Assembly (NCBI RefSeq): GCF_011386835.1
Contig: NC_088797.1
Span: 126,604,001-126,668,000, forward strand
From: Chrysemys picta bellii
Taxonomy: Eukaryota
Reading direction: 5' to 3'
Length of the DNA: 64,000 bases
Under the pieces are notes generated by a model. It worked only from the letters and a program-made list of their open reading frames with translations. It did no database searches and was not told where the DNA came from. Of this stretch, positions 24,901-63,791 are shown piece by piece. The position numbers and the translations under genes were made by a program. The stretch's first letter is position 1. Every line of letters starts with the position of its first letter.

Positions 24901-24978
24901 CCCGCCAGGCATTTGAAAAACAGGCTTCGCCTGCGAGGCTCAGGGGCCGATTCCAAGACCCCACCGCCCCCTGCCACT

Positions 24979-26709: not shown

Positions 26710-27080
26710 CAAACGTTTTAATTAATGACACCGGCGGGTTTTTTTTTTTTTCCCCGCCTCTCCCCCTCCTAAGCTCTTGCCTGCATGTGTGCGGCCCGTC
26801 GGGCCCCACAGCCATGGAAATATTAGGTTGACGGATGTGCTCTGTCGTGGGGGCTCCCTCGCCGGGCCCAGCTGTCAGCGCACCGCTGATGACATTAACG
26901 CGGGCAGAAAGTGATGACAAATGCCCGTTATCAGGGAACGAGGCCTGTGACAAATCGAACGGCGCCTCCCGAGCAGCCCCATTACGCTGTAATAAAAAAA
27001 GATGGATGGCTCCCCGCGCCGGGGCCCGGCGCTAATGCGATTTCGCCTGGTCTCGCCGGGTTCCAATTAAGGCAGAGAAC
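26710..27080. promoter_or_regulatory. Candidate conserved enhancer (MEIS/TALE-homeodomain cluster)
   Basis: Five TGACA/TGTCA motifs (26726, 26873, 26890, 26915, 26948) plus TTAATTAAT, CATTAA, GTAATAAA, CTAAT and CAATTAA in unique, CpG-retaining sequence. Confidence 0.55.
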
Positions 27081-34161: not shown

Positions 34162-34834
34162 GGTGACACGGGTGGGATCCTAATCCAGGGAGAGGGACCA
34201 CGGAGGCCTCAAAATGACCCTGCAGCCGTCGAGACCGAGTGACCGGCTCATTTCAGGGGGTGTTCCTGGGTTCGCTCACTGCTCGCGGCACCTCCTGCTG
34301 GCCATCTTGGGAATCAGCTCTGCCAGCTAGCGCTCTCCCTCCGTGGCCCCGCTCACTCCCAGATCTGCAGCCTCCTCTTCGTGGCTTGGCCCTCCGGCCA
34401 GGGTCGCTAAGATCCTCCTCTTCCGGGGAATTCACAGCGTTTCCAGACCCACTGACATCTCCAGCGCCTTGTGCCACTCCCCAGCGGCTGGCAGGGGAAT
34501 GCAGGCCTGCCCTCTACACGGGGTTCCAGCCTAGGGACCCTATAACAAGCAGCCAAAGTCTCTGCAAGGTCCTACCCTGGCTGTTCTATCCCTGGGCTTC
34601 TCCCTACCTATCTGACTTCCCTGCTGTCTGGGTTTGCCAGCCCCCAACTCCCCCCACTCAGGGAGTGACTTAAGCAGCCCCGCTCTCTGGAGCCAGCTAG
34701 CTGGCTTTATACAGCCCCCCCGTTCCGGCGCAGGTGAGCCCATTCCCTAGTCAGGGCTTTCCTCCCAGCCTTCAAGCTGCTAGGTTAATTGGTCCAGCCC
34801 TTCCACTCCTGGGTGAGGTGGACACCTCATCACA
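34162..34834. mobile_element. LTR-like segment upstream of the Gypsy gag remnant
   Basis: Starts GGTGACAC (TGTGAC-like) and ends CATCACA immediately before gag-like sequence; no clear TSD. Confidence 0.5.
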
Positions 34835-38574: not shown

Positions 38575-39410
38575 CCGGTGCCCCTCAATCCCGACCCGCA
38601 GCCCCCTGCTAGCCCAACCCTGGGCTCCCCCCAGCTCTGCCGGTGCCCCTCACTCCCGACCCGCAGCCCCCTGCTAGCCCAGCCCTGGGCTCCCTCCAGC
38701 TCTGCCGGTGGCCCTCACTCCCGACCCGCAGCCCCCTGCTAGCCCAGCCCTGGGCTCCCTCCAGCTCTGCCGGTGGCCCTCACTCCCGACCCGCAGCCCC
38801 CTGCTAGCCCAGCCCTGGGCTCCCTCCAGCTCTGCCGGTGGCCCTCACTCCCGACCCGCAGCCCCCTGCTAGCCCAACCCTGGGCTCCCCCCTCTGCCGG
38901 CGCCCCTCACTCCCGACCCGCAGCCCCCTGCTAGCCCAACCCTGGGCTCCCCCCAGCTCTGCCGGTGCCCCTCACTCCCGACCCGCAGCCCCCTGCTAGC
39001 CCAACTCTGGGCTCCCTCCAGCTCTGCCAGTGCCCCTCACTCCCGACCCGCAGCCCCCTGCTAGCCCAGCCCTGGGCTCCCCCCTCCAGCTCTGCCGGTG
39101 CCCCTCACTCCCGACCCACAGCCCCTGCTAGCCCAGCCCTGTGCTCCCCCCTCCAGCTCTGCCGGTGCCCCTCACTCCCGACCCACAGCCCCCTGCTAGC
39201 CCAACCCTGGGCTCCCTCCAGCTCTGCCGGTGCCCCTCAATCCCGACCCGCAGCCCCCTGCTAGCCCAACCCTGGGCTCCCTCCAGCTCTGCCGGTGGCC
39301 CTCAATCCTGACCCACAGCCCCTGCTAGCCCAGCCCTGGGCTCCCCCCTCCAGCTCTGCCGGTGCCCCTCACTCCCGACCCGCAGCCCCTGCTAGCCCAA
39401 CCCTGGGCTC
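38575..39410. repeat. GC-rich minisatellite, ~65-bp unit x ~13
   Basis: Unit GCCGGTG(C/G)CCCTCACTCCCGACCCGCAGCCCCCTGCTAGCCCAGCCCTGGGCTCCCTCCAGCTCT; same family as 3252-4717 in the opposite orientation. Confidence 0.95.
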
Positions 39411-42400
39411 CCCACACAACTCTGTGTCCTTCATTACTTCATTATTCAATTGATGAGTCGCAGGTGGGTGTGCTCCGTCCCCTGCCGCCGAGCACCCGGG
39501 CAACCCCAGCGCTGCTAAGCTGAGCCTCTCCTCATCTCCGCTGGCACGACCGCAACGAACAGAAAACTCTCCGGCCAGTTCCAAACAGCCCCAGCGCTCG
39601 GCTTTCTGCCCTCCGGAGCCAGCCCGGGCCCCAGCTTGGCCGTAGGCTGCAGGAAGTGGGATGGGCAGCTTTTCAATGGGTCATTCATTTAACCAAGTTC
39701 CCCGCGGGCATTTCTACGGCTCGCCAGTTCCTGCCGCACGACCCCCCCAGAGCCGGGAGCAGCACTGGTCGGGGGGGGGGCGGCTCTGAGGATATCCACT
39801 CGCTCCCACCACGCTCAGTGACTCCTGGGGGCTCCAGCCTCGGAGGGTCTGCGACAGCCAGCCAAGGGGAAGGCACTTGCGCCCGCAGGGCAGGACCGGC
39901 GGGGCTGGGGCCAGAGAGCCAGACCCCCGTCCTGAGGATCTGACCCGCAAGGGGAGCCCAGCCCCTGAGGGAGGGGGGGTGGCTAAGGGAGGGGTGTGTA
40001 CAGCTGTTGGGTGGGTGCCGGCGTGTGCGTACACACGTCGGGGGCTGCGGGATGAGAGAAGGAACCACAGCATCCCACACGCACAGCCCTGCGCCCAGTC
40101 AAAGGCAGAGCCCCGGGGTGTCACGAGGGCCCGGACCCAGAGGCTGCTGCGGGCCCCAGCACCCCGTGCCCAGCGCGCTGTAGGCTCATGGGCTTCTCCA
40201 TTGTCTGGTCCTCCAGCTCCCTCTGCTGCCAGCAACCAGCCGCTGCTGCCCAAGTCCTACAGCAGGGCCCTGGACCCGGCTATACCAGCCGTCCCTGCCG
40301 TGGGGTCCCTCGTGGGTAATGAGGTGCTGTCTAGAACGCTGACCCCCTCGGGCACCACCCTGGCTGGGTGCGTCCAGTGACCCAATTGTCTCCTCAGCCT
40401 GTGGGTGGAGACCAGCCTAGGGTGTCACCCGATGAGCTGCCCAGGGCGGGGAGGTGCCGTGCAGCTGGCATGGGGACCCTCGTTCTCTGCTGCCCTGTAC
40501 CGTGGGCGCTCACTGATGCCAGGAGAAAGCGGGCAGGACATGACAGCTAGCCAGAACGGCTGCAACTCACAGTCCCTTCGCACGAGTGACTCCGCAAAGT
40601 GCAGGACGATGGCGAATCGGGCCCTGAGCTTTTGCACACTTGTTTCTCACCAAGTCCTCGGGCCAGGCTCTGTGTGTGTGTGTGTGTGTGTGTTAACCGG
40701 CCCATGCCAGACCATTACGCTACAGGGAGAGGGTGGGAGAAGGTCCAGCGCTCCATGCCCAGCGACTCCCCTGCACAACGCAGTCCCAGGTACCTCCCAG
40801 GTGAGCCCGACGTTCACAGCAGCTAACGAGCACGCCACGGGTGACAATGAATGACCCCAGAGCATGAGGCAGGGCAGGGGCTTTTAAAAACATATTTTAT
40901 TCATCAAACTCAATGAGGACAATTGAAGGAAAACTGAGCCGTCCCCTTCTTCGGCCCTACCTCAGAAGAGCAGATCAAAGGGGTATTTGAAAGTAAAAGG
41001 CAGGAAATTGAGCATCAGAGCCATGGAAATGTTCCGGTATCTGGCCCTGGCCCTGGCCCTGGCCCTGTGGAACTCAATGCCCGCAGAAAGCTGAGGGGCT
41101 GAATTCTGCGGCTGAAAAACGCACGTTTTGTTTTAGGGACAGAGGACTCACCGGAAAGCATCAGACCTGCCACCGCTCCTGTCAGGTCTCCTGGCTCCAA
41201 CGGCGGCTGGCACCGGATGCTTCAGACAAAGGTGCAAGAACCTCCAGAATGGACAGACCTGAAATAACCAGCCCGTCTAAGAATAACGGCCTGAACCCAG
41301 GCACGGTGCGCGTGGCCGAGTGGGGAGGGTTAATCACCACTCAGCTACGTTTTGATCCTCTTTCGTGTCATCTCTTCGTACCCAGCCAAGTGCCCGGTTC
41401 TGATCTGAATCCCACTTTGCCACCAGCTCTCAGCAAGGACAAGAGCCATGAGTTCCACAGGTTAATACCCATTATAGAGCTGAGAAAGCATTTCCTTTCC
41501 AATGCTGCCTTTCCATTTCATGGGCTGCTCCCCCTTGGATGCATATGCTGGGGCTGGGTGACGGGGAGTTGCTTCTTTCCCTCCTGTGAGTATTTTACAA
41601 GCCTCCTCTCTCACGCCCCTGGTAAATGCCTCGGGGCAGGGCCTGCGTATGGGGGCTGGAAGGCACCGTGCCCAGCGGTGGCGTTAAAACCACAAGCTAA
41701 TAAAGCAGTAAACAAGAAAGGTCAGTAATTCCGGGCAGCGGATGAAGAGGCAGCACTGCTCTGCCCACGCTGGGAGCACGTCGTACAGCTCCAAGCACCT
41801 CCGTGATGGAGCCAGAAAAGAGCAACCGAACACAAGGAAGGGGCAAGAGGGGACAGAGTGAAATCTACAGCCCCGAGCCTCGTAGAGGCAGCTGCCTGGC
41901 GCCCAGCCAGAGCTCCACCAAGGACCAGCCTTGAACCAGATCGCAGCCCAAGCTGGTTTTCTAGCATGGCTGGTGCCCCAGCGTGAGGGCAGTGCCGGGT
42001 GTGCACCCCAAGGTGCTCCGGGGGTCATGGGGGTGGGATTAACAGGCGATCTGCTCTTGGAAAACACCTGGTGAGGCCTGATAGGCTGTGGCCTCAGCTC
42101 CCAAGGGAAACACGGGAACCACCATCGCGACAAGTGGGTGGCTGAAGCCCCACGCTGCGTCCTTTCTACGGAGCGACCCCGGAGCTGGCAGGAATGGTGC
42201 TAGACGCACAGGCACCAAAGATGGGCCCTTTGCCATCAGGGAGCCCGGCACAACACTGGCCATGGGCCTGCTCCCCAAATCCCTAGAGCAGATCTTAGAA
42301 AACAGCCAATCCAGATTTAAAATGTGCCCATGCTGGCGATTCCACCATGCCCGTGGTAGATCATCGCGTGGTTAATTGCCCTCACACTCACTGTTCAAAA

Positions 42401-44440: not shown

Positions 44441-46005
44441 GACTGGTCAAGCCCCACTCGCTGGGGCGACGCTGGAAACCAACACCACGTGCTGCCCAGA
44501 AACAGCCCAGTGGACTGGAGAGGCCTGGGGGCAGGACCCCGCTCTAGATCAGGTCCCAAGACCAGGCCCCCCCGCCCACTTGCCCCGCTCACCCTGAGCT
44601 AGGGAGAGTTCTTTTGTATTCGTGAGAGGCTCCCAGAGGGCTCGAGGCCCCATTGTGACAGGCACTGCCCAGCCCCCTACAGAGATACAGGTCCTGGCCC
44701 TCGCAATCTAAACAGACAAGACAAAGGGTGGGGAAGGGAAACTGAGGCACAGAGCGGCGTCATGACAGAACCGACGTTTCCTGCAGGCCGGTTCAGGCCC
44801 TGTGTCACCGGACCAGATTCTGCTGCCCTCCATGTAGCGCCGCTGAAAGCGAGAGGCTGACGTGGGTCTTCGCCGGCGTTCCAGGCTTGTGCTAGGGCCT
44901 GGCACTGGGGTGAATTTAACCCAGGAGCTCTGGGCGGAGATAACCTCGCCCACGCCCCGCCCACTGCCCCCTAGTGTAGCCGCAGCCACCTCCCTTTAAA
45001 TAACAAGTGCCAGCAAAACGCATGTCCCGGAGAACCCCCGCCGCGGCGGCACCAACCCCAGCGCAGCGGGCACCACCGTGCAACGCGCCCCCGGGAAGAA
45101 CGGTGACGTTCCCGTTCACGGGGTGGGCCACTCCACACAAAGGGAAGGTATCAGAGGGTTCAGCCAAAATATATATATGTCAAAGGACTAGTTTTTGCTG
45201 CGGAAGGATACACTTATTACAAAGGTTGCGATGCATAGTTATAAAAGTGAGTCCTTGAAGCACCTGAAGTCCCCGGCTGGCCGGCCTGCAAGCCCATCCA
45301 TTTCCCCTGATCCTCGTTACCTCGTGCTAATTATCAGGGACCACCTGCGGGGCTGTGCATCTGGAAGGCACTTGGCAGGGGGGATCTGAGCCCCCCTCAC
45401 AACCCTTCGGCTCCTCGCAGGTAGGAAAGCAGCATCCTCCCCAAGGGCGGGGATGGGGAAACTGAGGCACAACTCGGTGACGAGAGGAGGTGAAGGCCAA
45501 AGGTGGAGCCAAGCACTCTCGGGTCCCAGGCCTGCCTTCTTTGGGAACACGGGTGCTGGAATGTTCCGCGGGTCCTTGGCCAGGGCTGGGGGGCCTTGCC
45601 GATGAGCCGGGACCTATCTGCAGGGTTTGTGGGACCCCTGCAGGCAAGGGGCCAGCACCGTCAGCGTCATTCCTCCCACCTCGCTGAATTCATCGACGGC
45701 CCAACCCAGAGCAGGGCGATCTTGGCCACATACCCCACCCCACCAACCCCCCCCCCCCCCCCGGCTGTTCAGAACGAGCTCGGCTGGCAAATGAGCCTGT
45801 TTCTCCAGGGAGCAAGACAGCGGAACCCGCCTGCTGCAAGAACCCCCCGGGTACCCCACACCTGGGCACCCACCCACCCCGTGGCGCCCCTGCCAGCAAC
45901 GTCCACGGCTGGATCCCAGCGCTCTGCCTCCAGGCACCCCAGGGATGCGCGCCCATCTCTGCAGCCCGTCTCCGGTGGGGGGCAGCCGTGGGGCCTGGGC
46001 TCCGC

Positions 46006-46110
46006 TCACTTGGGGCTGCCCCTGCTCGGCGTGTCGCCGGGCTCCGGGTTCTCCTCTTCCTCCAGGTACTGGCACATGCTGTCCACCAGGGAGTCCAGGC
46101 CCGCGAGCCC
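46006..46110 (-). CDS. Pseudokinase gene, final coding exon
   Basis: gggtctccgcag|GGG...AAG TGA; [34 protein letters not shown]. Confidence 0.8.
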   Translation of the reverse strand, partial: GLAGLDSLVDSMCQYLEEEENPEPGDTPSRGSPK

Positions 46111-49100
46111 CTGCGGAGACCCAGACGGGGGGTGAGTTACCAGCATGGGAGGGCCCCGCTCTGCCCTGCTGGGGGGGGTCACTGAGCTCAGCCCACCCCC
46201 AACGCCTGCTCCTGTCCCCTGCCCTGCCCGAGGCCCCCCCAGGCCCTTCGGGAGACCGTCCCCCAGCCTGAGCCATCGCACCGGTCCCCACCCCGCGGGC
46301 CCGGCTCACCTGGTGCTGGGCCAGCAGCGGGCGCACGCAGGTTCTCATGCTCTTCCGGAAGGCGTAGGGGTCCTCGCTGCTGGACAGGCTGCTGGGGTCA
46401 AAGCAGACGCCCTGGAGGCAAGAGAGGAGTGTGGGGAGGAGGTGAAACCCCACCGGCGAACCTGCCCCCCTCTCCCAGTCACCCCGGCCCCACCGCCAGG
46501 ACCCTGGGCAACAGATCATAGATCTGAGCCCCCCGCGCGATTCCCCACAGCCCAGCACCCCCTAGGGAGCCCCCCACCTGCCCCCCCCCCCGCATGCCCG
46601 GCGCCCCCTAGAGATCCCCCACCCGTGGCCCAGCGCCCCCTAGGGAGCCCCCTGCCTGCCTCCCACAGCACAGCGCCCCCTAGAGACCCCCCGCCCACGG
46701 CCCAGCGCCCCCTAGAGATCCCCCACCCGTGGCCCAGCGCCCCCTAGGGAGCCCCCTGCCCGTCCCCCGCAGCACAGCGCCCCCTAGAGACTCCCCGCCC
46801 ACGGCCCAGCGCCCCCTAGAGATCCCCCACCCGTGGCCCAGCGCCCCCTAGGGAGCCCCCCATCTGCCCCCCCTGCAGCCCGGCGCCCCCTAGAGATCCC
46901 CCACCCATGGCCCAGCGCCCCCTAGGGAGTCCCCCGCAGCTCAGTGCCTCCTAGAGACCCTCCACCCGCGACCCAGCGCCCCCTAGAGACCCCCCGCAAG
47001 CGACCCAGCGCCCCCTAGGGAGCCCCCGCCCGCCCCCACAGCCCAGCGCCCCCTAGGAAACCCCCCCACCTGCAGCCCAGCGCCCCCTAGAGAGCCTCCC
47101 TGCAGCACAGCAGCGCCCCCTGCTGCAGGGGCAGGAGCGGGGGGACGGGCTGTGGAAAGCCCCTTGTGCAGAGACCAGCGGGCGTGGGAGAGCAGCGAGC
47201 CCCACCTGGGCCGTGTAGATGGAGGCCGCGCCGACGTCCCCAGGGTGGAAGTGGTGGCGTTTGCAGAACCGCAGGAAGTTCAGCACCTCCCGCAGGGCTC
47301 GAGCTCCCTCCAGGCCGGGCCCCTCGGGCGGCCGCCCCACCGCTGGGGAGGGCAGAGGAGACAGATCAGCGACCGGGACCCTGCAGGCCCAGGCTGCCCG
47401 GTCACTCCAGCCAGGGCGACCGTCCCAGAGAACGGGGACCAGGGAGCTGCCAGCGCCCACGGCTTAGACTCGGGGACCGCCGCGTCCCAGCAGGGCCAAC
47501 CAGCCCCAGCTCCCAGCCCCAGGGCCCTCTAGGGAACCTGCCGGAGGAAAGGGGCTGCCCAGAGAACCGCCACTCGGCTGGGATCCTGCCCCACACTCCT
47601 GGGAGCCGGTGGCCCCACTAGCCCATATCCCGCCTTTGAGAGCCACTAGGCACCCAGCCCCTCGCTTGCCTCTCCAGCGTCTCAGCCGTTCCCAGAACCA
47701 GAGCCTGGCCCTGCCGGGGGGCAGACGGGCCAGGGCCTCCCCACGGCTATTCCAGCCCGACCTGGGTGGGGTGCTGGGGATCTCGGCGCTCGCCCGCCCC
47801 CCCCATTAACGGGGTGCTGGTGGGACACTGGCGGGAACCTCTCTACTGCAGCCTGGTGCCCCGCGGGTGCCCACGTGCTGCCCCGGCTGCCCCCCCATGC
47901 CCTGCCGGGCGCTCACCGTGCACGTCCCTGTCCTCCATGAGGTAGAGGATGGAGCCGTTGCGGTCGTACAGGACGGCGTAGGGTACCAGCAGCGTGGGGT
48001 GAGGGGGCAGGAACAGGAAATTGTGTAACATCTTCCTCCAGTCGGAGACCACGGGCACCTGGCAAACAGAGGAGAGGCTGAGACTGCGTCCTGGGCCCCA
48101 ACCAGCATCAACTGGGGCCCCTCAGTCCCGACCCGCAGCCCCCTGCCAGCCCAGCCCTGGGCACCCCCACCCCAGCTCTGCCAGGGCCCCTCACTCCCAA
48201 CCCGCAGCCCCCTGCTAGCCCAGCCCTGGGCTCCCTCCAGCTCTGCCGGTGCCCCTCACTCCCGACCCGCAGCCCCCTGCCAGCCCAGCCCTGGGCTCCC
48301 CCACCCCCAGCTCTGCCAGGGCCCCTCACTCCCCACCTGCAGCCCCCTGCCAGCCCAGCCCTGGGCTCCCCCACCCCAGCTCTGCCGGTGCCCCTCACTC
48401 CCGACCCGCAGCCCTGGGCTCCCCCCACCACAACCCCTGAATCCCGACCTCCAGGATACGCAGAGGTCTGCTGTTTGCAGGCTCCTCGGGGCAGGGAGCC
48501 CGTCTCAGTCTGCACTCCCTACAGCCCTGAGAACAGGGGTGCAAATGCCCATTCCTGGTCCCTCCCTCCCCAAATGCGCCTCGGCTCTGGGCCGAGGACA
48601 CCCCACTCCAACCCCCTCGTCCGGGCCAGGCCCTGGGGTCAGCTGCCGGGCCACGCTCTTCCCCGGAGCTAAATCGGGCGCCGGTTTCCAGAGGCCGCCG
48701 TCGACGGCCATCAATAGCGCTCGGTTAATTAATTTGATGGGAACAGCAGGGACCACACTTTGCATTTAGTGAAGTTCCGAGAACTTCCAACCTCATCTTC
48801 ATAATTGGCCTCATAAATTTGAGGAAAGAGAGAAATCAGCAAAGCAGGAGGAGGGAAAGGAGCGAGAGGAACCGCTGCGCGCGGCAGAGAAGAGAAGTGG
48901 CTCCATTTGGCGTCCTTATTTAATTTGATTGCACAGATCCATCTTCCCCCTCCCTCCGCCAGCCCCCGCGCTCCCTGCTGGATTGACCTAATCATGATAA
49001 ATTCATATTCATTTCCCCGCCTGCGCCGGCGGGGGGAGCGCGCTCGTTACGCCTGCCCGCCCGGCCGCCACGCCATTAGCTCCTGCAAATATTTACTCAT

Positions 49101-52100
49101 GAATATTAAGCTCTGCATTAACATGCAAAACCCACTGAGGCCCCCCACCCCCCGCCACCCCAGCTCCCGGTGTCCTTCCAGGTCTCCCGCGCTGCAGCGG
49201 GCGCCAGGCAGGTGTGATTAAACATTGAGATGCTTGGAGGAGCCGGTGATTAAAGCTCGCCGCTCCCCGGGGATGGGGAGCAGAGAGGGCGCAGGGGCTC
49301 CGTGTGGATCAGATCCTGGGAGGTGCTGAGGAGAGGCTCAGAGATTCTGCATCGCCCTCACCCCCCGCCAGCCCAATGGCCTAATGGTTAGTGCTGGGCT
49401 GGGTGGGCCCCACTGCTATTCCTGCCCCAGCTCCCTCTCACAGCCCAGGGGCAGCGGGTCGGGAGTGAGGGGCACCGGCAGAGCTGGAGGGAGCCCAGGG
49501 CTGGGCTAGCAGAGGGCTGCGAGTCGGGAGTGAGGGGCCCCGGCAGAGCTGGGGGGGGCAGGGCTGCGCTATCAGGGGGCTGCGGGTAGGGAGTAAGGGG
49601 CACCAGCAGAGCTGGAGGGAGCCCAGGGCTGGGCTAGCAGGGGGCTGCGGGTCGGGAGTGAGGGGCACTGGCAGAGCTGGAGGGAGCCCAGGGCTGGGCT
49701 AGCAGGGGGCTGCGGGTCGGGAGTGAGGGGCACTGGCAGAGCTGGAGGGAGCCCAGGGCTGGGCTATCAGGGGGCTGCGGGTCGGGAGTGAGGGGCACCG
49801 GCAGAGCTGTGGGTGGGGGAGAGCCCAGGGCTGCGCTATCAGGGGGCTGCGGGTTGGGAGTGAGGGGCACCGGCAGAGTGGGGGTGGAGTGGGAAGCCCA
49901 GGGCTGGGCTATCAGGGGGCTGCGGGTCGGGAGTGAGGGGCACCGGCAGAGCTGTGGGTGGGGGAGAGCCCAGGGCTGGGCTAGCAGGGGGCTGCGGGTC
50001 GGGAGTGAGGGGCACCGGCAGAGCTGTGGGTGAGGGAGAGCCCAGGGCTGGGCTAGCAGGGGGCTGCGGGTCGGGAGTGAGGGGCACCGGCAGAGCTGTG
50101 GGGGGCAGCACCGTAGCAGCAGGGGGCCATTCCCAGCTCCAGGACCTCCCACTCCATTTTCAGCTGCTGCAACATTTGGTTTATTTTTAATTTTCAGGAT
50201 CATCAGATTCACAGCCAGTGGGGAGGGGGGGGGGCAGCCCCTTCCCGGGAAGCAGAAGCCAGGAAGCTGTGGAATGACAGCGCATTAGAGCCGTGTAATG
50301 TCCTCATCGCTCACCATGGGCCGCTCTCGGTCCCCCTCCCACCACGCGGCCCCTCAGACACCGACGCGGGACTGTCCCCTGCTGGCTGGAGTGGGCCCAG
50401 CCCAGGCCCCCTCTCCAGGGCTCTCTGGGGCTCCGGACAGGGCAGGTCCTTGGCCACGTACCTTTTTCATCAGCATGCTCTCCCCGGTGACCCGGTCCCG
50501 CGCTCGGAACCAGCGATCCGCCAGCTTCTCCGTGACGTAGAACTGCCGGCCCAGAGCGTAGTACAGGAAGAGGCTGCAGTTGGGCAGGGTCGTGGCCAGC
50601 TTCCGCCCATCCCGCTGGAAAGGAGAAGGCATTTTAATGAACATACCAACGGCCAGACTGGGTCAGACCAAAGGTCCATCCAGCCCAGTGTCCTGTCCAC
50701 CGACAGTGGCCAATGCCAGGTGCCCCAGAGGGAATGAACAGAACAGGGAATCATCCAGTGATCCATCCCCTGTCGCCCATTCCCAGCTTCTGGCAAACAG
50801 AGGTTAGGGACACCATCCCTGCCCATCCTGGCTAATAGCCATTGATGGACCTGTCCTCCATGAACTTAACTCGTTCTTTTTTGAACCCTGTTATAGTCTT
50901 GGCCTCACAACATCCTCTGGCAACAGGTTGACTGTGTTGTGTGAAGTAGGACTTCCTTTTGTTTGTTTTAAACCTGCTGCCTATTAATTTCATCGGGTGA
51001 CCCCCTAGTTCTTGTGTTATGAGAAGGAGTAAATAACACTTCCTGATTTACTGTCTCCACACCAGTCATGATTTTATAGATCTCTATCCTATCCCCCCTT
51101 AGTCGTCTCTTTTCCAAGCTGAAAAGTCCCAGACTTATTAATCTCTCCTCATACGGAAGCCGTTCCATTCCCCTAATCATTTTTGTTGCCCTTTTCTGAA
51201 CCTTTTCCAATTCCAATATATCTTTTTTGAGATGGGGCGGCCACATCCGCACGCAGTATTCAAGATGTGGGCTTACCATGGATTTATATAGAGGCAATCT
51301 GATATTTTCTGTCTTATGATCTACCCCTTTTTTAATGATTCCCAACATTCTGTTCGCTTTTTTGACTGTCGCTGCACATTGAGTGGCAGAGAACTATCCA
51401 CAGTGACTCCAAGATATCTCTCTTGAGTGGTAACAGCTAATTTAGACCCCATCATTTTATATGTATAGTTGGGATTATGTTTCCCAATGCGCATTACTTT
51501 GCATTTATCAACATTAAATTTCATCTGCCATTTTGTTGCCCAGTCACCCAGTTTGGTGAGACCCTTTTGTAGCTCTTTGCAGTCTGCCTGGGACTTAAAT
51601 ATCTGGAGTAGTTTTGTATCATCTGCAAATTTTGCCACCTCACTGTTTACCCCTTTTTCCAGATCATTTATGAATATGTTGAATAGGACTGGGCCCTGTA
51701 CAGACCCCTGGGGGACACCACTATTTACCTCTCTCCATTCTGAAAACTGACCATTTATTCCTCCCCTTTGTTTCCTATCTTTTAACCAGTTACCAATCCA
51801 CGAGAGGACCTTCCCTCTCATCCCAGGACAGTTTACTTTGCGTAAGAGCCTTGTTAAAAGCTTTCTGAAAGGCCAAGCACACTGTACAGACTGGGTCCCA
51901 TTCACCCTTTGGGCCGCAGCGTTGCACTGGGAGCCCACGTTTAGCTGATTGTCCACCACGACCCCCAAATCTTTGTCAGAGTCGCTGCGTCCCAGGATAG
52001 CGACCCCCCCGTAGGGCTGTCTGCATTCTCCGTTCCTCCATGCAACATTCATAGATTCAAGGACTGGAAGGGACCTCGAGAGGTCATGGAGTCCAGTCCC

Positions 52101-55100
52101 CTGCCTTCATGGCAGGACCAAATACTGTCTAGACCATCCCTGATAGACATTTATCTAACCTACTCTTAAATATCTCCAGAGATGGAGATTCCACAACCTC
52201 CCTAGGCAGTTTATTCCAGTGTTTAACCACCCTGACAGTTAGGAACTTTTTCCTAATGTCCAACCTAGACCTCCCTTGCTGCAGTTTAAACCCATTGTTT
52301 CTGGTTCTATCCTTAGAGGCTAAGGTGAACAAGTTTTCTCCCCCCTCCTTATGACATTTAGCCACATTTGAATGCGTATCCCCAGCTCGCCCTGCACCGA
52401 GGATCTGACCTCTCTGTTACTTCCCACTCCCCCAGTGGGTGTGTCACCTGCAAACGTTACCAGGGAGGATTTTCGGTTTCCTTCCCGGTCACTGATCAGA
52501 ATGGTAAGTTGTGTAGGCCCAAGAACCAACCCTGGCGAGATTCCTCCAGAAACCCCCCCGCTCCATGACGATTCCCCAGTTACATTTTGAGACCCATCAG
52601 CCAGTTTTTAATCCATGTCCCGTGGCCGTGTTAGTTTGATATCGTGCTAGTTTTTTAGGCAAAATATCATGTGGTACCAAGTCAAGCGCCTGACATGGCC
52701 TTTGGGGGTGAAAGGAAACACAAGGGTCTACAAGCCGGCTGGGAACCACCAGGGAGGGCCTTGCGTCAAACCGCCTAGTGGTACGTGAACCTCATGGAGA
52801 AATCAAGCTTCAGGGCATAAACCTGCAGGGTCAGGAAGGAATTTTGACAGCAGCTGTACAATTAACCAGGTGCATTATGGGGATTTGGCCTGACTGTGGG
52901 TCATAGGTGGGATGCTTGCAGACCAGGCACCAGCTCGCCTGGGCACTGGCAAATACACAGCCGGAGTCCGGCTCACCTGCTAACACAGGTATTCGCTTGC
53001 TCAGCAGCCGTGTTGTGTCTGTGACTGCGAATCGCCGTACAGGAGAGGGGCATTAACCCGAGCGAAGAGCTGCGCAGAGCGCAGGAGCTCCGGGGCTGGA
53101 GAGTGTCTCGGAGGCTGGGTTACCGCCCTGCCTGTCCACACCCAGAGTACTAGGTGCAAACGCTGGCTCAAGTCACAAGGGGGAACGAAGCGGGTAAGAA
53201 CATAGGAGCTGCCAGGCTGGGTCAGACCAAGGGTCCATCTAGCCCAGTGTCCTGTCCTCAGTATCTTGCCAGCGGCCAGCGCCGGCTGCTGCAGAGGGAA
53301 GGAAGAGAACAGGGCAGGTATGGAGTGGAGGGAGCCGGCTCGCCGCTGTTTGGGTCCAACAGGGAAACCAGCAAGAGGCTTGGCGCCAGCAGCAGGCTGC
53401 ATTTAAAAAAGTGCGGGACTAAGTGGCCGGGGGCTGTGGGTTGGGATGGGGGCACCGGTGGGGAGGGGGAGGCTGTGGGTCAGGATCAAAGATCGCAGAG
53501 CTGAGGCAGGGGAGGGGGGGAGGGGAGTATAGGGCTGGAAAAGCTGTGTGGCGGGGTATGGGGGTCAAACCAATGAGCTCATTGGATCAAGGACTGTCCT
53601 TTCCTAGCTGCGTACCACACCTGGCACATTTGGGGCACTCCTGTAATCCTGGGGTTCTCCACCTTTTCCATACCAGGACCCCCCCCCCCATCTAGTCACG
53701 ACCCATAGCAGAGAACCCCTGCTGGGGGTCACAGCTACTAGCAGGCTCAGGGACGCAGGGCAGCAGCCGGCCGTGGGCACACGGGAGAGGGGTTAAGCCC
53801 GAGCCAGGTTCCTCGCCCGTTCAGCTCCCTGCCGGGCACCCGCCGGGCGAGCTGTCGGCACTCACCATGGGCAGGATGGCCAGCCCCAGCGCCGCATGCT
53901 CCTCCACTCGTCCCAAGACCAGGCCCGAATCCAGGAGCGAGAAGCAGCCGCCCTCGGCGTCCAGGAACGTCCGTCTCAGCTCCTCCAGGAGGGACAGGCC
54001 GCACGCCTTGGTGAGCCTCCCGTAGGCGTCCTCCACGGACGTCTTAGTGGGAGCGCTGGCACCCGCGGGCCCCAGGTCCCTGATTTGCTGGGCCTGGCTG
54101 GCCGGCTCCTGGGAGACGGGCTGGCTGCTTTCACGGCCTGGGCCGGCTGAGCCAACAGAGCTCCTGGTCCCCGGCCGCTTCCCCAGCTCAGTGCCCCGGG
54201 GCCGACTTGTAACTGCCTCCTCCTCTGTCCTGCCGGGACCTTCCGGCGGCAGCTCCTCTTCCCGTGGGTCTGCTGAGGGGGGCTCTGGCTGAGGGGGGGC
54301 ACACGGGGCCAGCCCGCTCCCCACTGGATGGGGGATGTCCCGTGTCCCTTCCCGGCCGATCACCAGCTCCCTCGTGCCCTCGCTCAGCGCGATGCTGCCG
54401 TCCCGCCGCGGCTTGGCTGCTGTTTCTGATGTCAAGGGGTCACGCCCACGGCCTGCGCCCTCAGCCCGGCGTGTGCCCGCCCTGCCCGCCGAGAGGCCAA
54501 GAGCTGCGCTGGGAGGGACGCCCGCACAGTCCTGCTCTTCCCGGACCCCACAGCGACTCTCTGGTGGAGAGACATCCCGTCCCGGCTGCATGGGGCAGAG
54601 CCGCGCCTCAGCCCAGGGGGAGCAGCCTTCTCGGATGGGGGGCTTCTCCAAGGCCGAGGGGGGAGCCGTCCCATCCTCCAGCCCTGGCTTGGTCTCTGGG
54701 GGCTCCCAGAGCTCTAGATCCAGGCCTTTGAGGCCCCCGCACCTCCCTGGCTCTCCCCAAGGCCCGCTGCTCAGCCTGGCCGGCCCGGTGGGCAGCTCGC
54801 TGGGCTGCAGTGTGAGGCGGGGGTCTCGGTGCGGGGGCGCAGAGCTGGTCCCGAAGCTGAACGGCAGTGTGGACTGGCCAAAGCCCTTCCCCGGGCAGGA
54901 CCCCGGGGGCAGCTTGGGGTAGGGGGCGTTCCAGAGTCGGCAGCCGGCGCCAGGCTGGGGTCCCGTCTGCAGCTTAGCGAGGCTGCAGCAGCGGCAGCCG
55001 GCGGGAGAGGGGGGCCCCTCGTAGCCCGGCACGGGCAGCGCCCCCGTCTCGCTGACGGCCGTCTTGATGGCGTGCTGATGGCTCCGCGTCCCCCCCGAAG

Positions 55101-55164
55101 GCAGCAGCGCGGCGGTGAGGTCGATGTCGGTCTCCGTGGTGATGGGGGACCCGGTGCGCTGCAT
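46006..55164 (-). CDS. Uncharacterised 645-aa protein with a truncated pseudokinase domain; join(55164-53866, 50614-50462, 48058-47917, 47342-47206, 46411-46310, 46110-46006)
   Basis: Six exons with canonical GT-AG sites and consistent phases (0,0,1,0,0), total 1938 nt with no internal stop. Kozak GTCACCATGC; high GC3. Kinase-like [60 protein letters not shown]. Confidence 0.85.
46310..46411 (-). CDS. Pseudokinase gene, coding exon 5
   Basis: ctcttgcctccag|GGC...CAG|gtgagc; 102 nt; [34 protein letters not shown]. Confidence 0.85.
46554..47125 (-). repeat. Tandem array (32-42-bp spacing) carrying ~15 CTCF-like motifs
   Basis: GCGCCCCCTAG occurs exactly 14 times (46601, 46633, 46673, 46705, 46737, 46777, 46809, 46841, 46883, 46915, 46976, 47008, 47046, 47080), plus GCGCCCCCTGCTGC at 47113 and two degenerate copies. 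Confidence 0.85.
47206..47342 (-). CDS. Pseudokinase gene, coding exon 4
   Basis: ctgccctccccag|CG...CAG|gtgggg; 137 nt; (A)[45 protein letters not shown]. Confidence 0.85.
47917..48058 (-). CDS. Pseudokinase gene, coding exon 3
   Basis: ctctgtttgccag|GTG...CAC G|gtgagc; 142 nt; [47 protein letters not shown]. Confidence 0.88.
48115..48420. repeat. Minisatellite of the 65-75-bp family, ~5 copies (C-rich on +)
   Basis: CCCCTCACTCCCGACCCGCAGCCCCCTGC(T/C)AGCCCAGCCCTGGGCTCC units. Confidence 0.9.
48690..49260. promoter_or_regulatory. Candidate conserved intronic enhancer
   Basis: Dense homeodomain-type motifs (TTAATTAATT, CATAATTGG, CATAAAT, TTATTTAATTTGATTG, CTAATCATGATAAAT, two GTGATTAAA, CTGCAAATATTTAC) in unique sequence between two repeat arrays. 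Confidence 0.6.
49440..50100. repeat. Minisatellite of the 65-75-bp family, ~10 copies (G-rich on +)
   Basis: GGGCTGCGGGTCGGGAGTGAGGGGCAC(C/T)GGCAGAGCTG...GAGCCCAGGGCTGGGCTAGCAGG units; inverted relative to 48115-48420. Confidence 0.92.
50462..50614 (-). CDS. Pseudokinase gene, coding exon 2
   Basis: ccttctcctttccag|CGG...AAG|gtacgt; 153 nt; [51 protein letters not shown]. Confidence 0.88.
50641..51865 (-). mobile_element. Relatively young 5'-truncated CR1 LINE (RT C-terminal half to 3' end)
   Basis: ORFs 51321-52052 and 50968-51348 encode CR1 RT ([21 protein letters not shown]...KFADDTKL) and the C-terminus (HLEYCVRMW...[12 protein letters not shown]); frameshifted by a deletion. Confidence 0.95.
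51870..52700 (-). mobile_element. Old CR1 RT fragment interrupted by a younger CR1 3' end (52050-52352)
   Basis: The outer piece encodes [13 protein letters not shown] and SLVTFAGDT-like degenerate RT motifs; the inner piece encodes [31 protein letters not shown] and the CR1 3' UTR. Confidence 0.75.
53190..53315 (-). mobile_element. CR1 3' end fragment
   Basis: taagaacataggagctgccaggctgggtcagaccaagggtccatctagcccagtgtcctgtc is a reverse-complement CR1 terminus. Confidence 0.75.
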
Positions 55165-55205: not shown

Positions 55206-56139
55206 CTGGGAGGAGACACAAGGGACAGGGGTGACAGGCGCTGGCCTCGGGGCTAGCTAGGCGCTGGGCCTGCGGGTGCAGCCCGCTCCCCGGCTCGGGT
55301 GCAGCCCCAGGGCCCGTCACTGACCCGTCCCCTCAGCAGATCTCCCCAGCCTGGGGCCGAGGGGAAGCTCAGGGTCTGTTCCCACCCTGGGCAGGTCCCC
55401 AGCCCTTCTGGGGACGCGGTGCATTCTCACTGCTCCCTGGGTACCCCCCACCTACCCCAGCCAGCCCTGCAGCGACCCCTCTAGGGCGAGGGGGGTTTGG
55501 TCTCCCAGTCCCTTTCAGTCCTCGGCCCCCTCTTGGGGTCGCCAGCAAGGGGCCTGGCTAGTGCCCAGCGTGGGGGCTGTTTGTACGTGGACACCCACTC
55601 CCCGGGAACCGGGCAGTGCGCGACCCGCTTGGCACAGGTCACCAGTGGTGGTCCGGCCACCTGCTGCTCCCTCCCGGCTGCCCTGGCGGCTGAAGGGGTC
55701 TGATCTGCGGGGAGCTGGCGGGCGACCAGGCCCCAAGGACGGGCTGCAAATGAGGGAATTCCACAAGCCTTGTCCGCACACGGACTCGGCAGAGCGGCCA
55801 CAAGGGGGTGCCATTCTCACACCGATGCTCACGGGCCGGGGGAGTCAACGGGACAGCACCGTAGCCACGGCTGGGAGCCCGAGGGGCCAGGCAGGGCCTG
55901 GGGACCCCCCGCTGCCTGCCTCAGCTCCGTCCTAATGCTTTGAGAGCAAGAACGGGTGAGCTGCTGCGCCGCAGGGCCCTGCTGCCACTCCGGCTGCGAG
56001 CTTCCTCCCCACCGTGCCCTGTCAGTAGTAGGGTCAGTCCCCTTCCGGGAACTGAGTCTCCGTTACCTGTGACCTGTCCCCGTCCCCACCCCTCCATCGC
56101 TCGCTCTGTTCTCAGAGTTTTCCCCACTCAGGAACTTAC

Positions 56140-56231: not shown

Positions 56232-59224
56232 CTGCAGAGAAAGGGGAGTGTCAGTGGGGGAGACGGCTCCTGAGGGGCGGGGGCACTGCGGCCTGTGCCC
56301 TCCCTCAGCTCTGGGCCTGGCATGAGCAAGGCCTCAATCCTGCCCATCAGAGCAAGGCCCAAGCCAGATCCAGCCACCCGATGCGAGCTCCCTGGCAGCA
56401 GTGCCCCACCAATGCCCCAGCACTCCCCAGCTCAGGCCCCTTTTCCGGGAGGCCTAGGTGGGGCCCTGGCTAAGGCTCATCTGGTTCCAGCCTGATGGGA
56501 AGTGCCCGAGAATCCCCCCCCAACCCCCCTCCACACACACACGGGGCCTATCCTCACACCCAAGTGTTCAGGGAAGCGCCCGAATCCGAGTCGCACGCCC
56601 CAGACTGCCTGCACCAGAGCCTCGCTGCCCCTTCCCCTGCACAGTTACCCAGGATCACTCTCAGTCCCTGAAAACCCCATCAGTGCCAATGTGCCTACCC
56701 CCGTACCCCAGGCTGTTGAGCAGAGCCCCATGGGGACAAAACGCCAATCCCCTCCTGCACAGGCCCTGACCCCAAAGAGAATCCCCATCCGCTGTTGGCA
56801 GTACAGGGCCAATGACACACAGCACAGCAGCTCCAGCGCCATCCAGCAGAGGGCGGCGGTGGCACAGCACCCTGGGTGGCTTATTGCCACATTCTCCCCC
56901 TACCTAGGGACAGCACTTGACAGTTTTCCAACCCAAGCGCACAGCCCCAGATCCAACCCCCCTACCCCACTCCCCACCCCCAAACGCTGGTGCCGGAGTC
57001 TGCCGCACAGATCCAAGGGCCTTCTCTGCCGCATCACCGCCCAGCTGCCCTTGGCCAAGGGCCTGCACGAAACCCCCAGGCAGCAAGACCCGTTACCTCG
57101 CCCTGAGATCCTCCGGCCTACGTGCCGTAGCCCAGGCCCGAGCGCACCGACTCTGCGGCAGGCACCCAACTTCCTTCCTCTCCACCCTGCCGGGGAAAAG
57201 CAACAGCGAGACCGAGAGGGGAGGAAGTACCGCTGCCAGACCCTAGACAAGCAGCCCTGGCTGGACGCCGCCCCACGGAGCCTGGCCCGCCGCGGCCTGT
57301 CCAGCCCCCGACAAACTCCGGGCTGGGGAAGCCGCCCGTCCCAGGGGAGCTAAGCAGCTGTGGGACATCGGTGCCAACCAAGTCCAGCCAGAGCAAGCCC
57401 CAGTCGGATGGAAAGCGAAAGCAGCTCCCGCCCGTGCGCATGTGCAGCCAACTCCGGAGGCTGGGCTTTGCCAGCTGCCCTGGCTGCGTGCCCTGGCTGC
57501 GTGCCCAGAACTGGCCCACGGCTGGTTAAGGTCCCCGGGCGGCTGCATGGGCAGCGTTAGGTGGACAGGGTCGGTTTGCCGATCGCTCCCTCGGTAGTGC
57601 GATGGGGGTCCTCGTGGGTTAGTGTCCCCCTGGGACCAGTCACCGAACCGGGGCTGGGTTCAGAACACCCCGAACCGCAGGGTCATTGTCTGGGGGCGGG
57701 CGGGAAAGGGGGATGGAGACCCCGTGACCTCTGTGAAGCAACGACACAGATGAGCTTTGAGCTCAGCTTCTGCGGCAGCAGCCCAGACAGGAAGGTGATG
57801 GGCCCTTTAGCAACGCCTAGACAGACGCCACAGCAGGGTAGGGGGCCCAGGCCTGTTTCTGCCCAGACCGTCCCCGTGGCACGACGGGGGCCCAGAAAGG
57901 CCACGGGCATCGCCTCTCTAGCAGGATGGCGTCTTCTCCCAGAGGGGCCCGGCCCAGAACAGGAACTCAGGCCTCGTTGCCTGGCTCTTCAGGTCCCAGG
58001 GGGTGGACGGGCTGAAATCCCGCTCCCTGCACGTGCCCAGCCGCCCAGGGGGTGAAGCGGGGAGCTGACAGGGAGCGAGGGGTGAGATTGGCCCAGGGAG
58101 GGACGGGCTCATTCGTGAGGTTACAGCAAACTCGGAACAGGGCCCAGTGCCAGCATCGCATGGAGTGGTGAGAAGCGCTGGGCACATAGCACCGGCTGTC
58201 CTCGTGCTCCGTGTCCAGAGTCACCCCAACACCTGGGGGAACCGGGAGGACCTGCCGGGCCAGCGCCCCTCACCCGATCGCAGCCCCAGGCAGACGGCCG
58301 GGCTTGGAGGCTTGGATCAGATCCTGCCGCTCGGTGAGAAAGGAGCGGAACGAAGACAGACAAAACTGCTGCAGTCGCTACGCTGGGCGTTCGGCCCCCT
58401 CGAGCTAGCCCCAGGGGCTCCCGCCTTCCGGGAAACATTCAGCGGAGACAAGACCGAACCGGGGCAGGGGGAACGGCAGGGAGATTTGCAAAGCCCAAGG
58501 AGGGGCAGCTTGGCTCAGCCCTCCCGGCCTGGGGGACCCTGCCACCGAGGGCTCCCTCCTTGGCAGCAGAACCGCCCTGAACGAGGGCCGCGGAGCCAGC
58601 TGGCTCCGGGCCCCAGTCACGCCCTTCCTGGGCGCCGGGAGCCGGGGGGCTCAGATCCACCCACCCAAAGGTCTGGCAGGTCCCTGCGCTGGGCCAGGGG
58701 GCCCCGGGCCTCCCCCACCAGCAATGGGAAGAGGGCGCAGCCGCGCAGCTTACCCACTCCCAGCCAGCCATCGCCGCCCTGGCTTCCTGCTCCCACCCCC
58801 GCGGCCGCTCACAAACACCAGCCGAGCTGGAGCTGACGAGCCAGCCTGCGCTCGGCCTACACGTCGCAACTCGCAGCCTGGCGGAGAGCCGAGAAGCCCC
58901 ACGCAGGGAAGGGAAGGGCTAACGGGCGAGCGCAGGCACCGCGGGGGCTTCTGGCTCCGTCCCAGACCCACCTCAGCTCCTGGAGGGGAGTCGTGGGAGA
59001 GGCTGGGCCTTCCGGATGGGTGTGAATTAACACCTGGGAGCGTCAAGAACTGATGGGGCAGCTCTGCCGGTGCCCCCCAATCCCGACCCGCAGCCCTTCC
59101 CTGGGCCGATGCCGGTCTGAGCAGCAGATAAATGCGCCCATTACCCAGGTCCCCGCCCACCCCCCAATTACAGACGGGGGGGGGGGCTCTACAGCTAACA
59201 CCTGGAGCTCTGGGGGGGTTCGGC

Positions 59225-62853: not shown

Positions 62854-63218
62854 TCACCAGTCCCGCTCGGTGGGCTCCCGGTAGGGCAGCCCTAGCAGCA
62901 CGAAGACGTCCCTCTCGGTGGGGGTGGGCAGGACGAGGCCGGGCCCCACCTTGCGGCCGCCGGGGGCGCGCACCACGGCGGTGTGGAGCGCGTGCTCTGA
63001 CAGGCTCATGCCCTTGGTCTTGGCCAGCGCTCGCATGGAGCGGTTGAAGTGGGCTGAGCCGGTGAAGTACAGGAGGGCGCAGGCGAACTCGCCGTGGGGC
63101 ACCACGATGATGTCGAGGCGCCGGTGGCGCCGGCCTGGCCCGGGCAACCGGCACACGCCCAGGTACTTCTTCTGGTTGCCGCTGTCTTCTTGGCTCACCA
63201 GGTCGTCGGTGAGGAAAC
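62854..63218 (-). CDS. POLL: DNA polymerase lambda, final coding exon
   Basis: Acceptor ctcctctggcag; (G)[75 protein letters not shown]...[13 protein letters not shown]; X-family polymerase C-terminus closely matching Pol lambda. Confidence 0.98.
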
Positions 63219-63791
63219 CTGCCAGAGGAGCAGCGTGAGAGGAGGGGACGGGCTGTGACCCCACCCTCTTCCCTGGCTCCCGCGGAAGCATCCCATAATC
63301 CACTGTACGGGTCCCTGGGCTCCTCCTAAAGGGGGCTCCTGGGCACTGGCTCTGGGTGCAGCGGGAGCACTCGCCAAGCCGCACCCGCTGCGCCGGCAGC
63401 ACCAACGCTTGGCCACCTTCGAACAAGGGTCCTGTTGGGAGCCGCCCCCGCTGCAGCACCGACCCAGCCAGCTTCCCGAGCTCTGTCGCAGGCCCCCCAA
63501 GTGAGAACGCCCCTGGGACCGGCTCGGGTCCATCGAGCCCAGCATCCTGGCTCAGACAGGGTCCAGGACCAGATGCTGCCGAGGAAGACCCCTGTGGCAG
63601 GTACTATGGGGCACCCACCCACAGAGAAAGTCCTCCTGACCCCCAAGGCAACAGACCATCCTGGATTCAGCCCTTTAGTGTCTGATCCACAGGCAGGGCA
63701 AGGCCCCGCGCCGGCTGCTCGCACTGACACAAACCCCTTCGCCTCCCATCGCGGAAAGTGCCAGCCAGCCGCCCGGCTGCAAGCCACGTAC

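What the first reader, a model, noticed from the sequence alone, without database searches (positions are those of the whole stretch)
46554..47125. Intronic tandem array of ~15 same-orientation, roughly helically phased CTCF-like motifs
Seen: 14 exact GCGCCCCCTAG plus one GCGCCCCCTGCTGC. On the minus strand these read (T)C(T/C)CTAGGGGGCGC(T/C)G and GCAGCAGGGGGCGCTG, matching the CTCF core CCASYAGRKGGCRS with 1-2 mismatches at its 5' end. Spacings are mostly 32,40,32,32,40,32,32,42,32 bp, close to 3 or 4 helical turns, so sites face roughly the same side of the DNA. Inference: repeat expansion has built a multivalent, directional CTCF/cohesin barrier at the edge of a developmental-enhancer landscape, and copy-number variation could tune insulation. 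Every motif contains a CpG, so methylation could switch it.
Basis: partly seen in the sequence, partly recalled or inferred. Interest (0 to 1): 0.8.

Follow-up and report, generated by a model that had tools for sequence, protein, structure and literature searches.

The report
Intronic minisatellite with partial CTCF motifs
A 600-base stretch inside an intron of an unnamed turtle gene next to POLL is an ordinary GC-rich tandem repeat; each of its 17 units carries a good half of a CTCF binding motif, so it could bind CTCF weakly, but nothing here shows it is a purpose-built chromatin barrier.

Summary
There are 14 exact GCGCCCCCTAG, one GCGCCCCCTGCTGC and two decayed copies, making 17 head-to-tail units at 46549-47147. 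All carry the CTCF-like motif on the minus strand. They are organised as a 104-bp higher-order repeat (32+40+32).

The array lies in the 795-nt fourth coding intron of an expressed, unnamed pseudokinase-like gene just downstream of POLL.

By PWM, 8 units are moderate CTCF matches (13.7-15.7 bits, p 2-7e-6), 6 are weak (9.0-11.8 bits) and 3 fail. The 3' half of the motif is perfect, but the 5' CCA triplet is never present inside the array. The best site straddles the array/flank junction. This fits partial duplication of one ancestral site.

Co-orientation, regular spacing and multiplicity follow automatically from tandem duplication. The helical phasing is fragile. The only core CpG is at the methylation-insensitive position 12.

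The array is present in three related taxa, one apparently with about half the units.

Verdict: an ordinary VNTR with possible but untested weak CTCF binding. This scan has noted at least ten similar arrays elsewhere in this genome.

The parts
46549..47147 (-). Minisatellite array: 16 full units of 29-46 bp plus one partial unit at the right edge. The CTCF-like motif is on the minus strand, which is the sense strand of the host gene.
46595..46908 (-). Three young copies of the 104-bp higher-order repeat (subunits of 32+40+32 bp), 87-93% identical to each other. The right-hand part of the array is older (70-76%).
47111..47129 (-). Best CTCF-like site of the array (15.7 bits, p 2e-6; core GCAGCAGGGGGCGC). 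Its 3' half lies in the last partial unit and its 5' half in unique flank, making it the candidate ancestral seed site.
46411..47205 (-). Fourth coding intron (795 nt, GT..AG) of the host gene. The sense strand is 49% G, with 69 G-runs of 3 or more and 14 non-overlapping canonical G-quadruplex motifs.
47206..47342 (-). Coding exon 4 of the host gene (ends ...IYTAQ, then the GT donor).
   Evidence: (RNA contig record 19)
46309..46410 (-). Coding exon 5 of the host gene (GVCFDPSS...LLAQHQ).
   Evidence: (RNA contig record 16)
46006..55164 (-). Coding span of the host gene: six coding exons. It is the ortholog of 'uncharacterized protein LOC142015620' of Carettochelys insculpta and has no Pfam domain.
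   Evidence: first-reader note s1-335640
50370..50388 (-). Context: strong single CTCF motif (17.4 bits), the nearest strong minus-oriented site.
55795..55813 (+). Context: strong single CTCF motif (19.7 bits) just upstream of the host gene, plus-oriented.
56840..56858 (+). Context: strong single CTCF motif (19.4 bits). It is the only perfect match to the IUPAC core in the window.
62854..63222 (-). Context: last coding exon of DNA polymerase lambda (POLL), matching residues 454-575 of the human enzyme.

Best explanation
This is a GC-rich variable-number tandem repeat in an intron. It grew by unequal exchange or replication slippage, first as ~32-40-bp units and later as a 104-bp three-unit block. 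One ancestral CTCF-like site (core GCAGCAGGGGGCGC, now at the array/flank junction) probably lay across the edge of the duplicated segment. Only its 3' half (AGGGGGCGC) was copied into every unit, while its 5' half was replaced by TCTCT or CTCCC. That would explain why all units share a perfect 3' half-motif, one orientation and a regular spacing, yet none inside the array has the CCA triplet. The units are medium (about 14-15 bits) or weak (9 bits) CTCF motifs. The array may attract some CTCF and would then add to the minus-oriented flank of a boundary-like cluster of stronger single sites near POLL. I judge it most likely a neutrally evolving repeat and not a selected, tunable insulator. Shown: anatomy, intron position, motif scores, presence in relatives. 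Inferred: the seed-site origin, neutrality and weak binding.
For: Array anatomy and higher-order repeat with an age gradient (93/87/88% versus 70-76% identity). PWM: 8 units at 13.7-15.7 bits, 6 at 9.0-11.8, 3 below threshold; the 5' triplet region is the most variable aligned part (17/64 cells) and never reads CCA. The best site straddles the junction, and similarity of the last unit to the others ends right after ...GCGCCCCCT. The window holds 9 other GC-rich minisatellites, so such arrays are the local norm. Two decayed units lost the core CpG by CpG>TpG/CpA, one still intact in organism C, and CpG o/e is 0.48, like the flanks, so this is not an unmethylated island. A 3112-nt contig of organism D spans the array but lacks 38+237 bp (about 9 units instead of 17). 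Stronger single motifs (17.4-20.4 bits) exist in the same window. A <=2-mismatch IUPAC match is near chance here (71 found, 50 expected).
Against: A random unit of this composition reaches >=13.7 bits only about 0.2% of the time, and none of the 9 other arrays exceeds 8.1 bits, so the resemblance is not trivial. The 11-mer is nearly invariant (3/176 cells) while its flanks vary by 16-27%, which could reflect constraint. The array sits in a region that is a CTCF boundary in mammals, on the side that fits its orientation. Other notes of this scan report many CTCF-motif arrays in this genome, hinting at a real class. Tandem 34-bp CTCF-site repeats do bind CTCF at mouse DXPas34.
Confidence: 0.55

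Rival explanations
1. A working multivalent CTCF/cohesin barrier. Several units are occupied by CTCF in vivo and stall cohesin arriving from lower coordinates. This would strengthen the minus-oriented side of the boundary between the BTRC/LBX1-side and FGF8-side domains, and copy number would tune its strength.
For: Eight units reach p<1e-5, and a unit-level chance match is about 0.2%. The 11-mer is nearly invariant. The array is retained at the same place in organisms B, C and D. Strong motifs in the window are arranged divergently, (-) at 12570/25502/34286/50370 and (+) at 55795/56840, with the array on the (-) side. POLL lies within a divergent-CTCF TAD boundary in mouse and human. DXPas34 shows that ~34-bp tandem CTCF sites can be bound.
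Against: Six units are weak and three fail. A 32-bp spacing is shorter than the roughly 40-50-bp CTCF footprint (my knowledge), so not all units could be occupied at once. The array is in the body of an expressed gene, with CpG decay typical of methylated DNA. The divergent ordering has a 1 in 15 chance with six sites. There are no occupancy data.
Confidence: 0.2
2. A transcription- or RNA-level element. The G-rich sense strand forms G-quadruplexes or R-loops, or supplies G-run splicing enhancers (hnRNP H/F type) for a short GC-rich intron. Alternatively, intragenic CTCF slows RNA polymerase II to aid exon recognition.
For: The sense strand of the intron is 49% G, with 69 G-runs and 14 canonical G4 motifs in 795 nt, against about 1 per kb per strand in the window. 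The 104-nt repeat RNA folds better than shuffles (z -3.0). The intron is spliced in RNA contigs. CTCF-dependent polymerase pausing and splicing effects are documented (PMC8373115).
Against: G-richness is a by-product of the repeat's composition. Other arrays in the window are equally G- or C-rich on either strand. There is no sign of alternative splicing here, and the unit number appears to vary without known consequence.
Confidence: 0.1
3. A repeat maintained or driven by another DNA-binding zinc-finger protein or by recombination. One candidate is a turtle PRDM9 allele, whose hotspots are known to coincide with GC-rich minisatellites. Others are SP/KLF/EGR/MAZ-type factors binding the C-rich spacers.
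For: The conserved block (about 18 nt, CCCAGCGCCCCCTAGRGA) is longer than the part that matches CTCF well. Spacers read as GC-box/CACCC-box-like strings (my reading). The higher-order structure and copy-number change point to frequent unequal exchange.
Against: No motif of turtle PRDM9 is available to test, and no tool result links any other factor. This is speculation from composition.
Confidence: 0.07

Closest known systems
Mouse DXPas34 minisatellite (Tsix/Xist locus)
   Same: Tandem monomers of 30-34 bp, CpG-containing, each carrying a CTCF site. Monomer types and CTCF-site numbers vary strongly between related species (PMC3149622).
   Different: DXPas34 is bound by CTCF and has a genetic role in X-inactivation. 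Here binding is untested, the motif lacks the 5' triplet, and the array is in an intron of an autosomal-type protein-coding gene of a reptile.
DXZ4 / Dxz4 macrosatellite
   Same: A tandem array of co-oriented CTCF sites whose orientation directs long-range contacts (PMC3491370 and bioRxiv 10.1101/165340, listed).
   Different: DXZ4 units are kilobases long, there are 50-100 copies, and CTCF binding is shown and specific to the inactive X. The array here is 0.6 kb with 32-40-bp units.
Ordinary GC-rich minisatellites (VNTRs)
   Same: Units of 10-100 bp, variant repeats, higher-order blocks, rapid copy-number change, a G/C strand bias, and enrichment in GC-rich gene-dense DNA. Nine others lie in the same window.
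   Different: Its unit scores far higher against the CTCF matrix (up to 15.7 bits) than any other array in the window (8.1 bits or less).
[quoted passage not shown]
   Same: The same neighbourhood (POLL), and a divergent arrangement of strong motifs in the window.
   Different: The mammalian boundary is made of a few single CTCF sites. No tandem array is described there, and the host gene of the array is absent from the mammalian locus descriptions I read.

Membership tests
Vertebrate CTCF binding site (core CCASYAGRKGGCRS / JASPAR MA0139.1) | 3' half of the core (A-G-R-K-G-G-C-R-S) present | tested here: met
   AGGGGGCGC is exact in 15 of 17 units.
Vertebrate CTCF binding site (core CCASYAGRKGGCRS / JASPAR MA0139.1) | 5' triplet C-C-A of the core | tested here: not met
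   Internal units read TCT or TCC, and only the middle C is kept. The junction site reads GCA.
Vertebrate CTCF binding site (core CCASYAGRKGGCRS / JASPAR MA0139.1) | PWM match at p<1e-5 (usual FIMO cut-off) | tested here: inconclusive
   8 of 17 units pass (13.7-15.7 bits), 6 reach only p<1e-4, and 3 fail. With the G-rich local composition, p per position rises about 5-fold.
Vertebrate CTCF binding site (core CCASYAGRKGGCRS / JASPAR MA0139.1) | CTCF occupancy in vivo or binding in vitro | not testable with these tools
   No ChIP or ATAC run could be listed, and the single read-laying run returned contigs only.
Methylation-switchable CTCF site (H19/Igf2-ICR type) | CpG at core position 2, where 5mC blocks binding | tested here: not met
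   The C at position 2 is followed by T or C. The only core CpG is at position 12, where methylation has almost no effect in vitro (PMC8084297; sequence).
Minisatellite / VNTR | Head-to-tail units of 10-100 bp with variant repeats | tested here: met
   17 units of 29-46 bp; TRF periods of 32 and 104 bp.
Minisatellite / VNTR | Copy number differs between individuals or close relatives | tested here: inconclusive
   An organism D contig spans the array with 275 bp less, but other short contigs of that run cover part of the missing stretch. Contigs of organisms B and C break inside the array. Long reads are needed.
TAD boundary / insulator | Insulation or loop anchoring in contact maps | not testable with these tools
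   There are no Hi-C data. Only indirect context is available: POLL lies within a boundary in mammals, and the motifs are arranged divergently.

The most novel reading that the evidence does not exclude
This array is one member of a turtle-wide class of minisatellites that multiply CTCF sites. Notes of this scan list at least ten other co-oriented CTCF-motif arrays in the same genome, one of them with 82 consensus units. In this reading the arrays are bound by CTCF in vivo. At this locus a fast-evolving array (17 versus about 9 units in a close relative) modulates the strength of the deeply conserved boundary next to POLL, between the LBX1/BTRC and FGF8 regulatory domains. That would give a natural copy-number series for asking how CTCF-site multiplicity sets insulation.
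Probability: 0.12. Interest if true: 0.65.

Novelty: new member of a known kind. Interest (0 to 1): 0.3.

Why it matters
Taken alone this is a routine VNTR. It shows that tandem duplication by itself produces the co-oriented, evenly spaced, multivalent motif arrays that can look designed. It would matter only if CTCF really binds. The array would then sit at a boundary region whose disruption causes split-hand/foot malformation in humans, and its variable unit number would be a natural dosage series for testing how many CTCF sites are needed for insulation. The recurrence of CTCF-like arrays in this genome deserves a genome-wide census against composition-matched controls.

Tried and rejected
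1. Relation to the very abundant 65-75-bp minisatellite family of the window (3253-4717, 38572-39413, 48115-48414, 49448-50102): local alignments score no better than shuffles (z -0.7 to 1.9), so this was rejected.

2. Other copies of the unit or its flanks in the window: none. The depth spikes over 46736-46811 and 47040-47191 therefore come from loose (85%) matches of short C-rich stretches elsewhere in the genomes. I could not characterise them.

3. Pfam on the flanking exons and on full-length homologues: nothing.

4. Known RNA families in 45800-48200: none at E<=0.1.

5. Open-chromatin libraries holding the intron: none was listed.

6. Earlier notes by sequence: blank.

7. A remembered beta-TrCP C-terminal signature and a WD40 pattern to place BTRC in the window: no match. 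The long ORFs at 4950-6200 and 26982-27695 look non-coding, so the genes to the left of the host gene remain unidentified.

8. The IUPAC core with <=2 mismatches as a criterion: abandoned, because 50 matches are expected by chance in this window.

9. Constraint on the 11-mer: my hand count of variant positions puts no shared (old) variant among its 11 positions and at least 8 among the 15 other aligned positions (about 1% by chance). The register was chosen after seeing the data and the C-run spacers are slippage-prone, so I do not count this as evidence of selection.

Full report
**What is there.** The + strand between 46549 and 47147 is a head-to-tail array. The exact 11-mer GCGCCCCCTAG occurs 14 times, all inside the array, against 0.10 expected in shuffles. 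GCGCCCCCTGCTGC follows at 47113. Two decayed units (GCACCCCCTAG at 46555, GTGCCTCCTAG at 46944) bring the total to 17 units, with spacings 46,32,40,32,32,40,32,32,42,32,29,32,32,38,34,33. Tandem Repeats Finder gives a 32-bp period (15 copies, 70% matches), but the best period is 104 bp (4.3 copies, 83%), that is, a higher-order repeat of three subunits of 32+40+32 bp. The first three 104-bp copies (46595-46908) are 93, 87 and 88% identical, while the right-hand part is only 70-76% like them. So the array has a young left part and an older right part. The excess over chance is trivial for a tandem repeat, because the 14 copies are one event amplified.

**Where it lies.**
- Both flanks are minus-strand exons.
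- A search with the exon at 47918-48058 found a 631-aa protein, 91% identical over the exon. It is named only 'uncharacterized protein LOC142015620' in the pig-nosed turtle, with equally unnamed relatives in platypus, possum, frogs, a caecilian and gar, and it has no Pfam domain.
- Its C-terminal 200 residues line up exon by exon with the window. The coding exons are at 55164-53866, 50614-50459, 48067-47918, 47342-47206, 46410-46309 and 46109 to about 46006.
- Contigs of a run guessed to be RNA join 46109 to 46309 and 47342 to 47917 without a mismatch (records 16 and 19), so the gene is expressed and spliced as modelled.
- The array fills most of the fourth coding intron (46411-47205, 795 nt, GT..AG).
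I confirmed the POLL part: the ORF at 62857-63459(-) has the polymerase-beta palm and thumb domains and matches residues 454-575 of human DNA polymerase lambda at E 1e-67.

**How CTCF-like are the units?**
That criterion is nearly worthless here. The window holds 71 such matches where 50 are expected by chance, and the units of an unrelated 65-bp repeat family pass it too.
- A position weight matrix discriminates better. The CTCCCTAG units score 9.0 bits (p 7e-5), and the junction site scores 15.7 bits (p 2e-6).
- In all, 8 of 17 units pass p<1e-5, 6 pass only p<1e-4 and 3 fail.
- This is not a trivial resemblance. A random 32-bp unit of the same composition reaches 13.7 bits with probability about 0.18% (7 of 5000 shuffles), and none of the nine other arrays in the window exceeds 8.1 bits.
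- It is not a strong site either. Six single motifs in the window score 17.4-20.4 bits.

**Why half a motif?** Aligning the units shows an almost invariant 11-mer: 3 variant cells of 176, all C>T or G>A changes at or beside the CpG, in units 1 and 12. The positions corresponding to CTCF's 5' CCA triplet are the most variable of the aligned block (17 of 64 cells) and never read CCA. The right-most unit shares only ...CAGCGCCCCCT with the others and then continues into unique flank (GCTGCAGGGG...). As a result, the best-scoring site of the whole region straddles the array/flank junction. My inference is that one ancestral site of the CAGCAGGGGGCGC type lay across the edge of the segment that began to duplicate. 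Its 3' half was carried into every new unit and its 5' half was not. This accounts for the perfect 3' half, the defective 5' triplet, the single orientation and the regular spacing without invoking selection for CTCF binding.

**Phasing and methylation.** The site angles have a resultant vector length of 0.63 at 10.5 bp per turn and 0.73 at 10.45, but 0.44 at 10.55. An equally high value (0.65) appears at 8.0 bp, simply because 32 and 40 share the factor 8. So the phasing is an arithmetic by-product and is not robust.

[quoted passage not shown] In these units the C at position 2 is followed by T or C, and the only core CpG is the GGCGC one at position 12. The proposed direct methylation switch is therefore unlikely. 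CpG observed/expected is 0.48 in the array and 0.47-0.54 in the flanks, at 66-77% G+C. The decayed units lost their core CpG by CpG>TpG or CpG>CpA, and one of them is still CpG in organism C. This is what germline-methylated gene-body DNA looks like, not an unmethylated island.

**Relatives.** Contigs of three other coded organisms, with flanks 1-2% diverged, place the array at the same spot. In organisms B and C the contigs break inside it. In organism D one 3112-nt contig runs through but lacks 38 and 237 bp, that is, about 9 units instead of 17. Other short contigs of that run cover part of the missing stretch, so this may be an allele or an assembly effect, and long reads are needed. Fast turnover with retention of the locus is typical VNTR behaviour.

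[quoted passage not shown] In the window the strong motifs are minus-oriented at 12570, 25502, 34286 and 50370 and plus-oriented at 55795 and 56840. That is a divergent pattern, and its turning point lies within the host gene's coding span (between 50.4 and 55.8 kb). The minus-oriented array sits on the matching side. With six sites this ordering has a 1 in 15 chance, so it is suggestive only. Mouse DXPas34 shows that 30-34-bp tandem monomers, each with a CTCF site, can be a working CTCF element (PMC3149622). Notes of this scan list at least ten other co-oriented CTCF-motif arrays in this genome. One was followed up as 82 consensus units belonging to a repeat family. These notes are unchecked leads, but they suggest a genome-wide class, of which this array would be a weak member.

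**Other properties.** The sense strand of the intron is 49% G, with 69 G-runs and 14 canonical G-quadruplex motifs in 795 nt, against about one per kb per strand in the window. The 104-nt repeat RNA folds somewhat better than shuffles (z -3.0). No Rfam family matches. These features allow a transcription- or splicing-level role, but they are equally by-products of composition.

**Verdict.** The feature is real and correctly described. The most likely explanation (0.55) is a neutrally evolving intronic minisatellite that amplified half of one CTCF-like site. A working multivalent barrier is possible (0.2). It is helped by the locus context but weakened by four things: the missing 5' triplet, the weak third of the units, a spacing shorter than a CTCF footprint (my knowledge), and the absence of any occupancy data. 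It is a new member of a known kind (CTCF-motif tandem repeats such as DXPas34). Interest is modest.

Noticed in passing
window 3253-4717, 9090-9267, 38572-39413, 48115-48414, 49448-50102: One dispersed minisatellite family (65-75-bp unit, present in both orientations) recurs five times in the window, twice inside the same host gene. Contig depth over its first bases (48104-48150) was 36,000-62,000 against a baseline of about 20 in three related organisms, so it is extremely abundant genome-wide. Each unit carries CTAGCAGGGGGCTG (2 mismatches to the CTCF core) but scores only 7.8-8.1 bits.
   Followed up: partly
window 46006-55164 (-): The host gene is a conserved but unnamed vertebrate gene (turtle, platypus, possum, amphibians, gar; no eutherian among the hits whose names I looked up). 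It has no Pfam domain, and its C-terminal region looks kinase-like to the eye (VKK, LMED, HHFHPGD).
   Followed up: partly
window 12570-12588(-), 25502-25520(-), 34286-34304(-), 50370-50388(-), 55795-55813(+), 56840-56858(+): Six strong single CTCF motifs (17.4-20.4 bits) are arranged divergently: minus-oriented on the left, plus-oriented on the right, turning within the host gene's coding span (between 50.4 and 55.8 kb). They are better boundary candidates than the array, in a region that is a TAD boundary in mammals.
   Followed up: partly
window 62854-63222 (-): The last coding exon of DNA polymerase lambda (POLL), which places the window in the POLL/DPCD/FBXW4/FGF8 neighbourhood.
   Followed up: yes
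window 50968-52052 (-): A fragment of a CR1-type LINE reverse transcriptase (RVT_1, E 5e-18, plus the typical C-terminal tail) in the first coding intron of the host gene (between the exons at 53866 and 50614).
   Followed up: partly
window 23302-24078 and 24344-24903: Two further G-rich arrays lie side by side: about 21 units of 34-38 bp with a variable poly-G tail, and 31 units of 18 bp (86% matches). Like the studied array, the first has a conserved core plus a slippage-prone homopolymer spacer.
   Followed up: no
window 46631-46650, 46735-46754, 46839-46858 (40-bp subunits): The CTCCCTAG-type units contain the 8-bp palindrome CCCTAGGG. In the transcript, neighbouring units pair through it (fold z -3.0).
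   Followed up: partly
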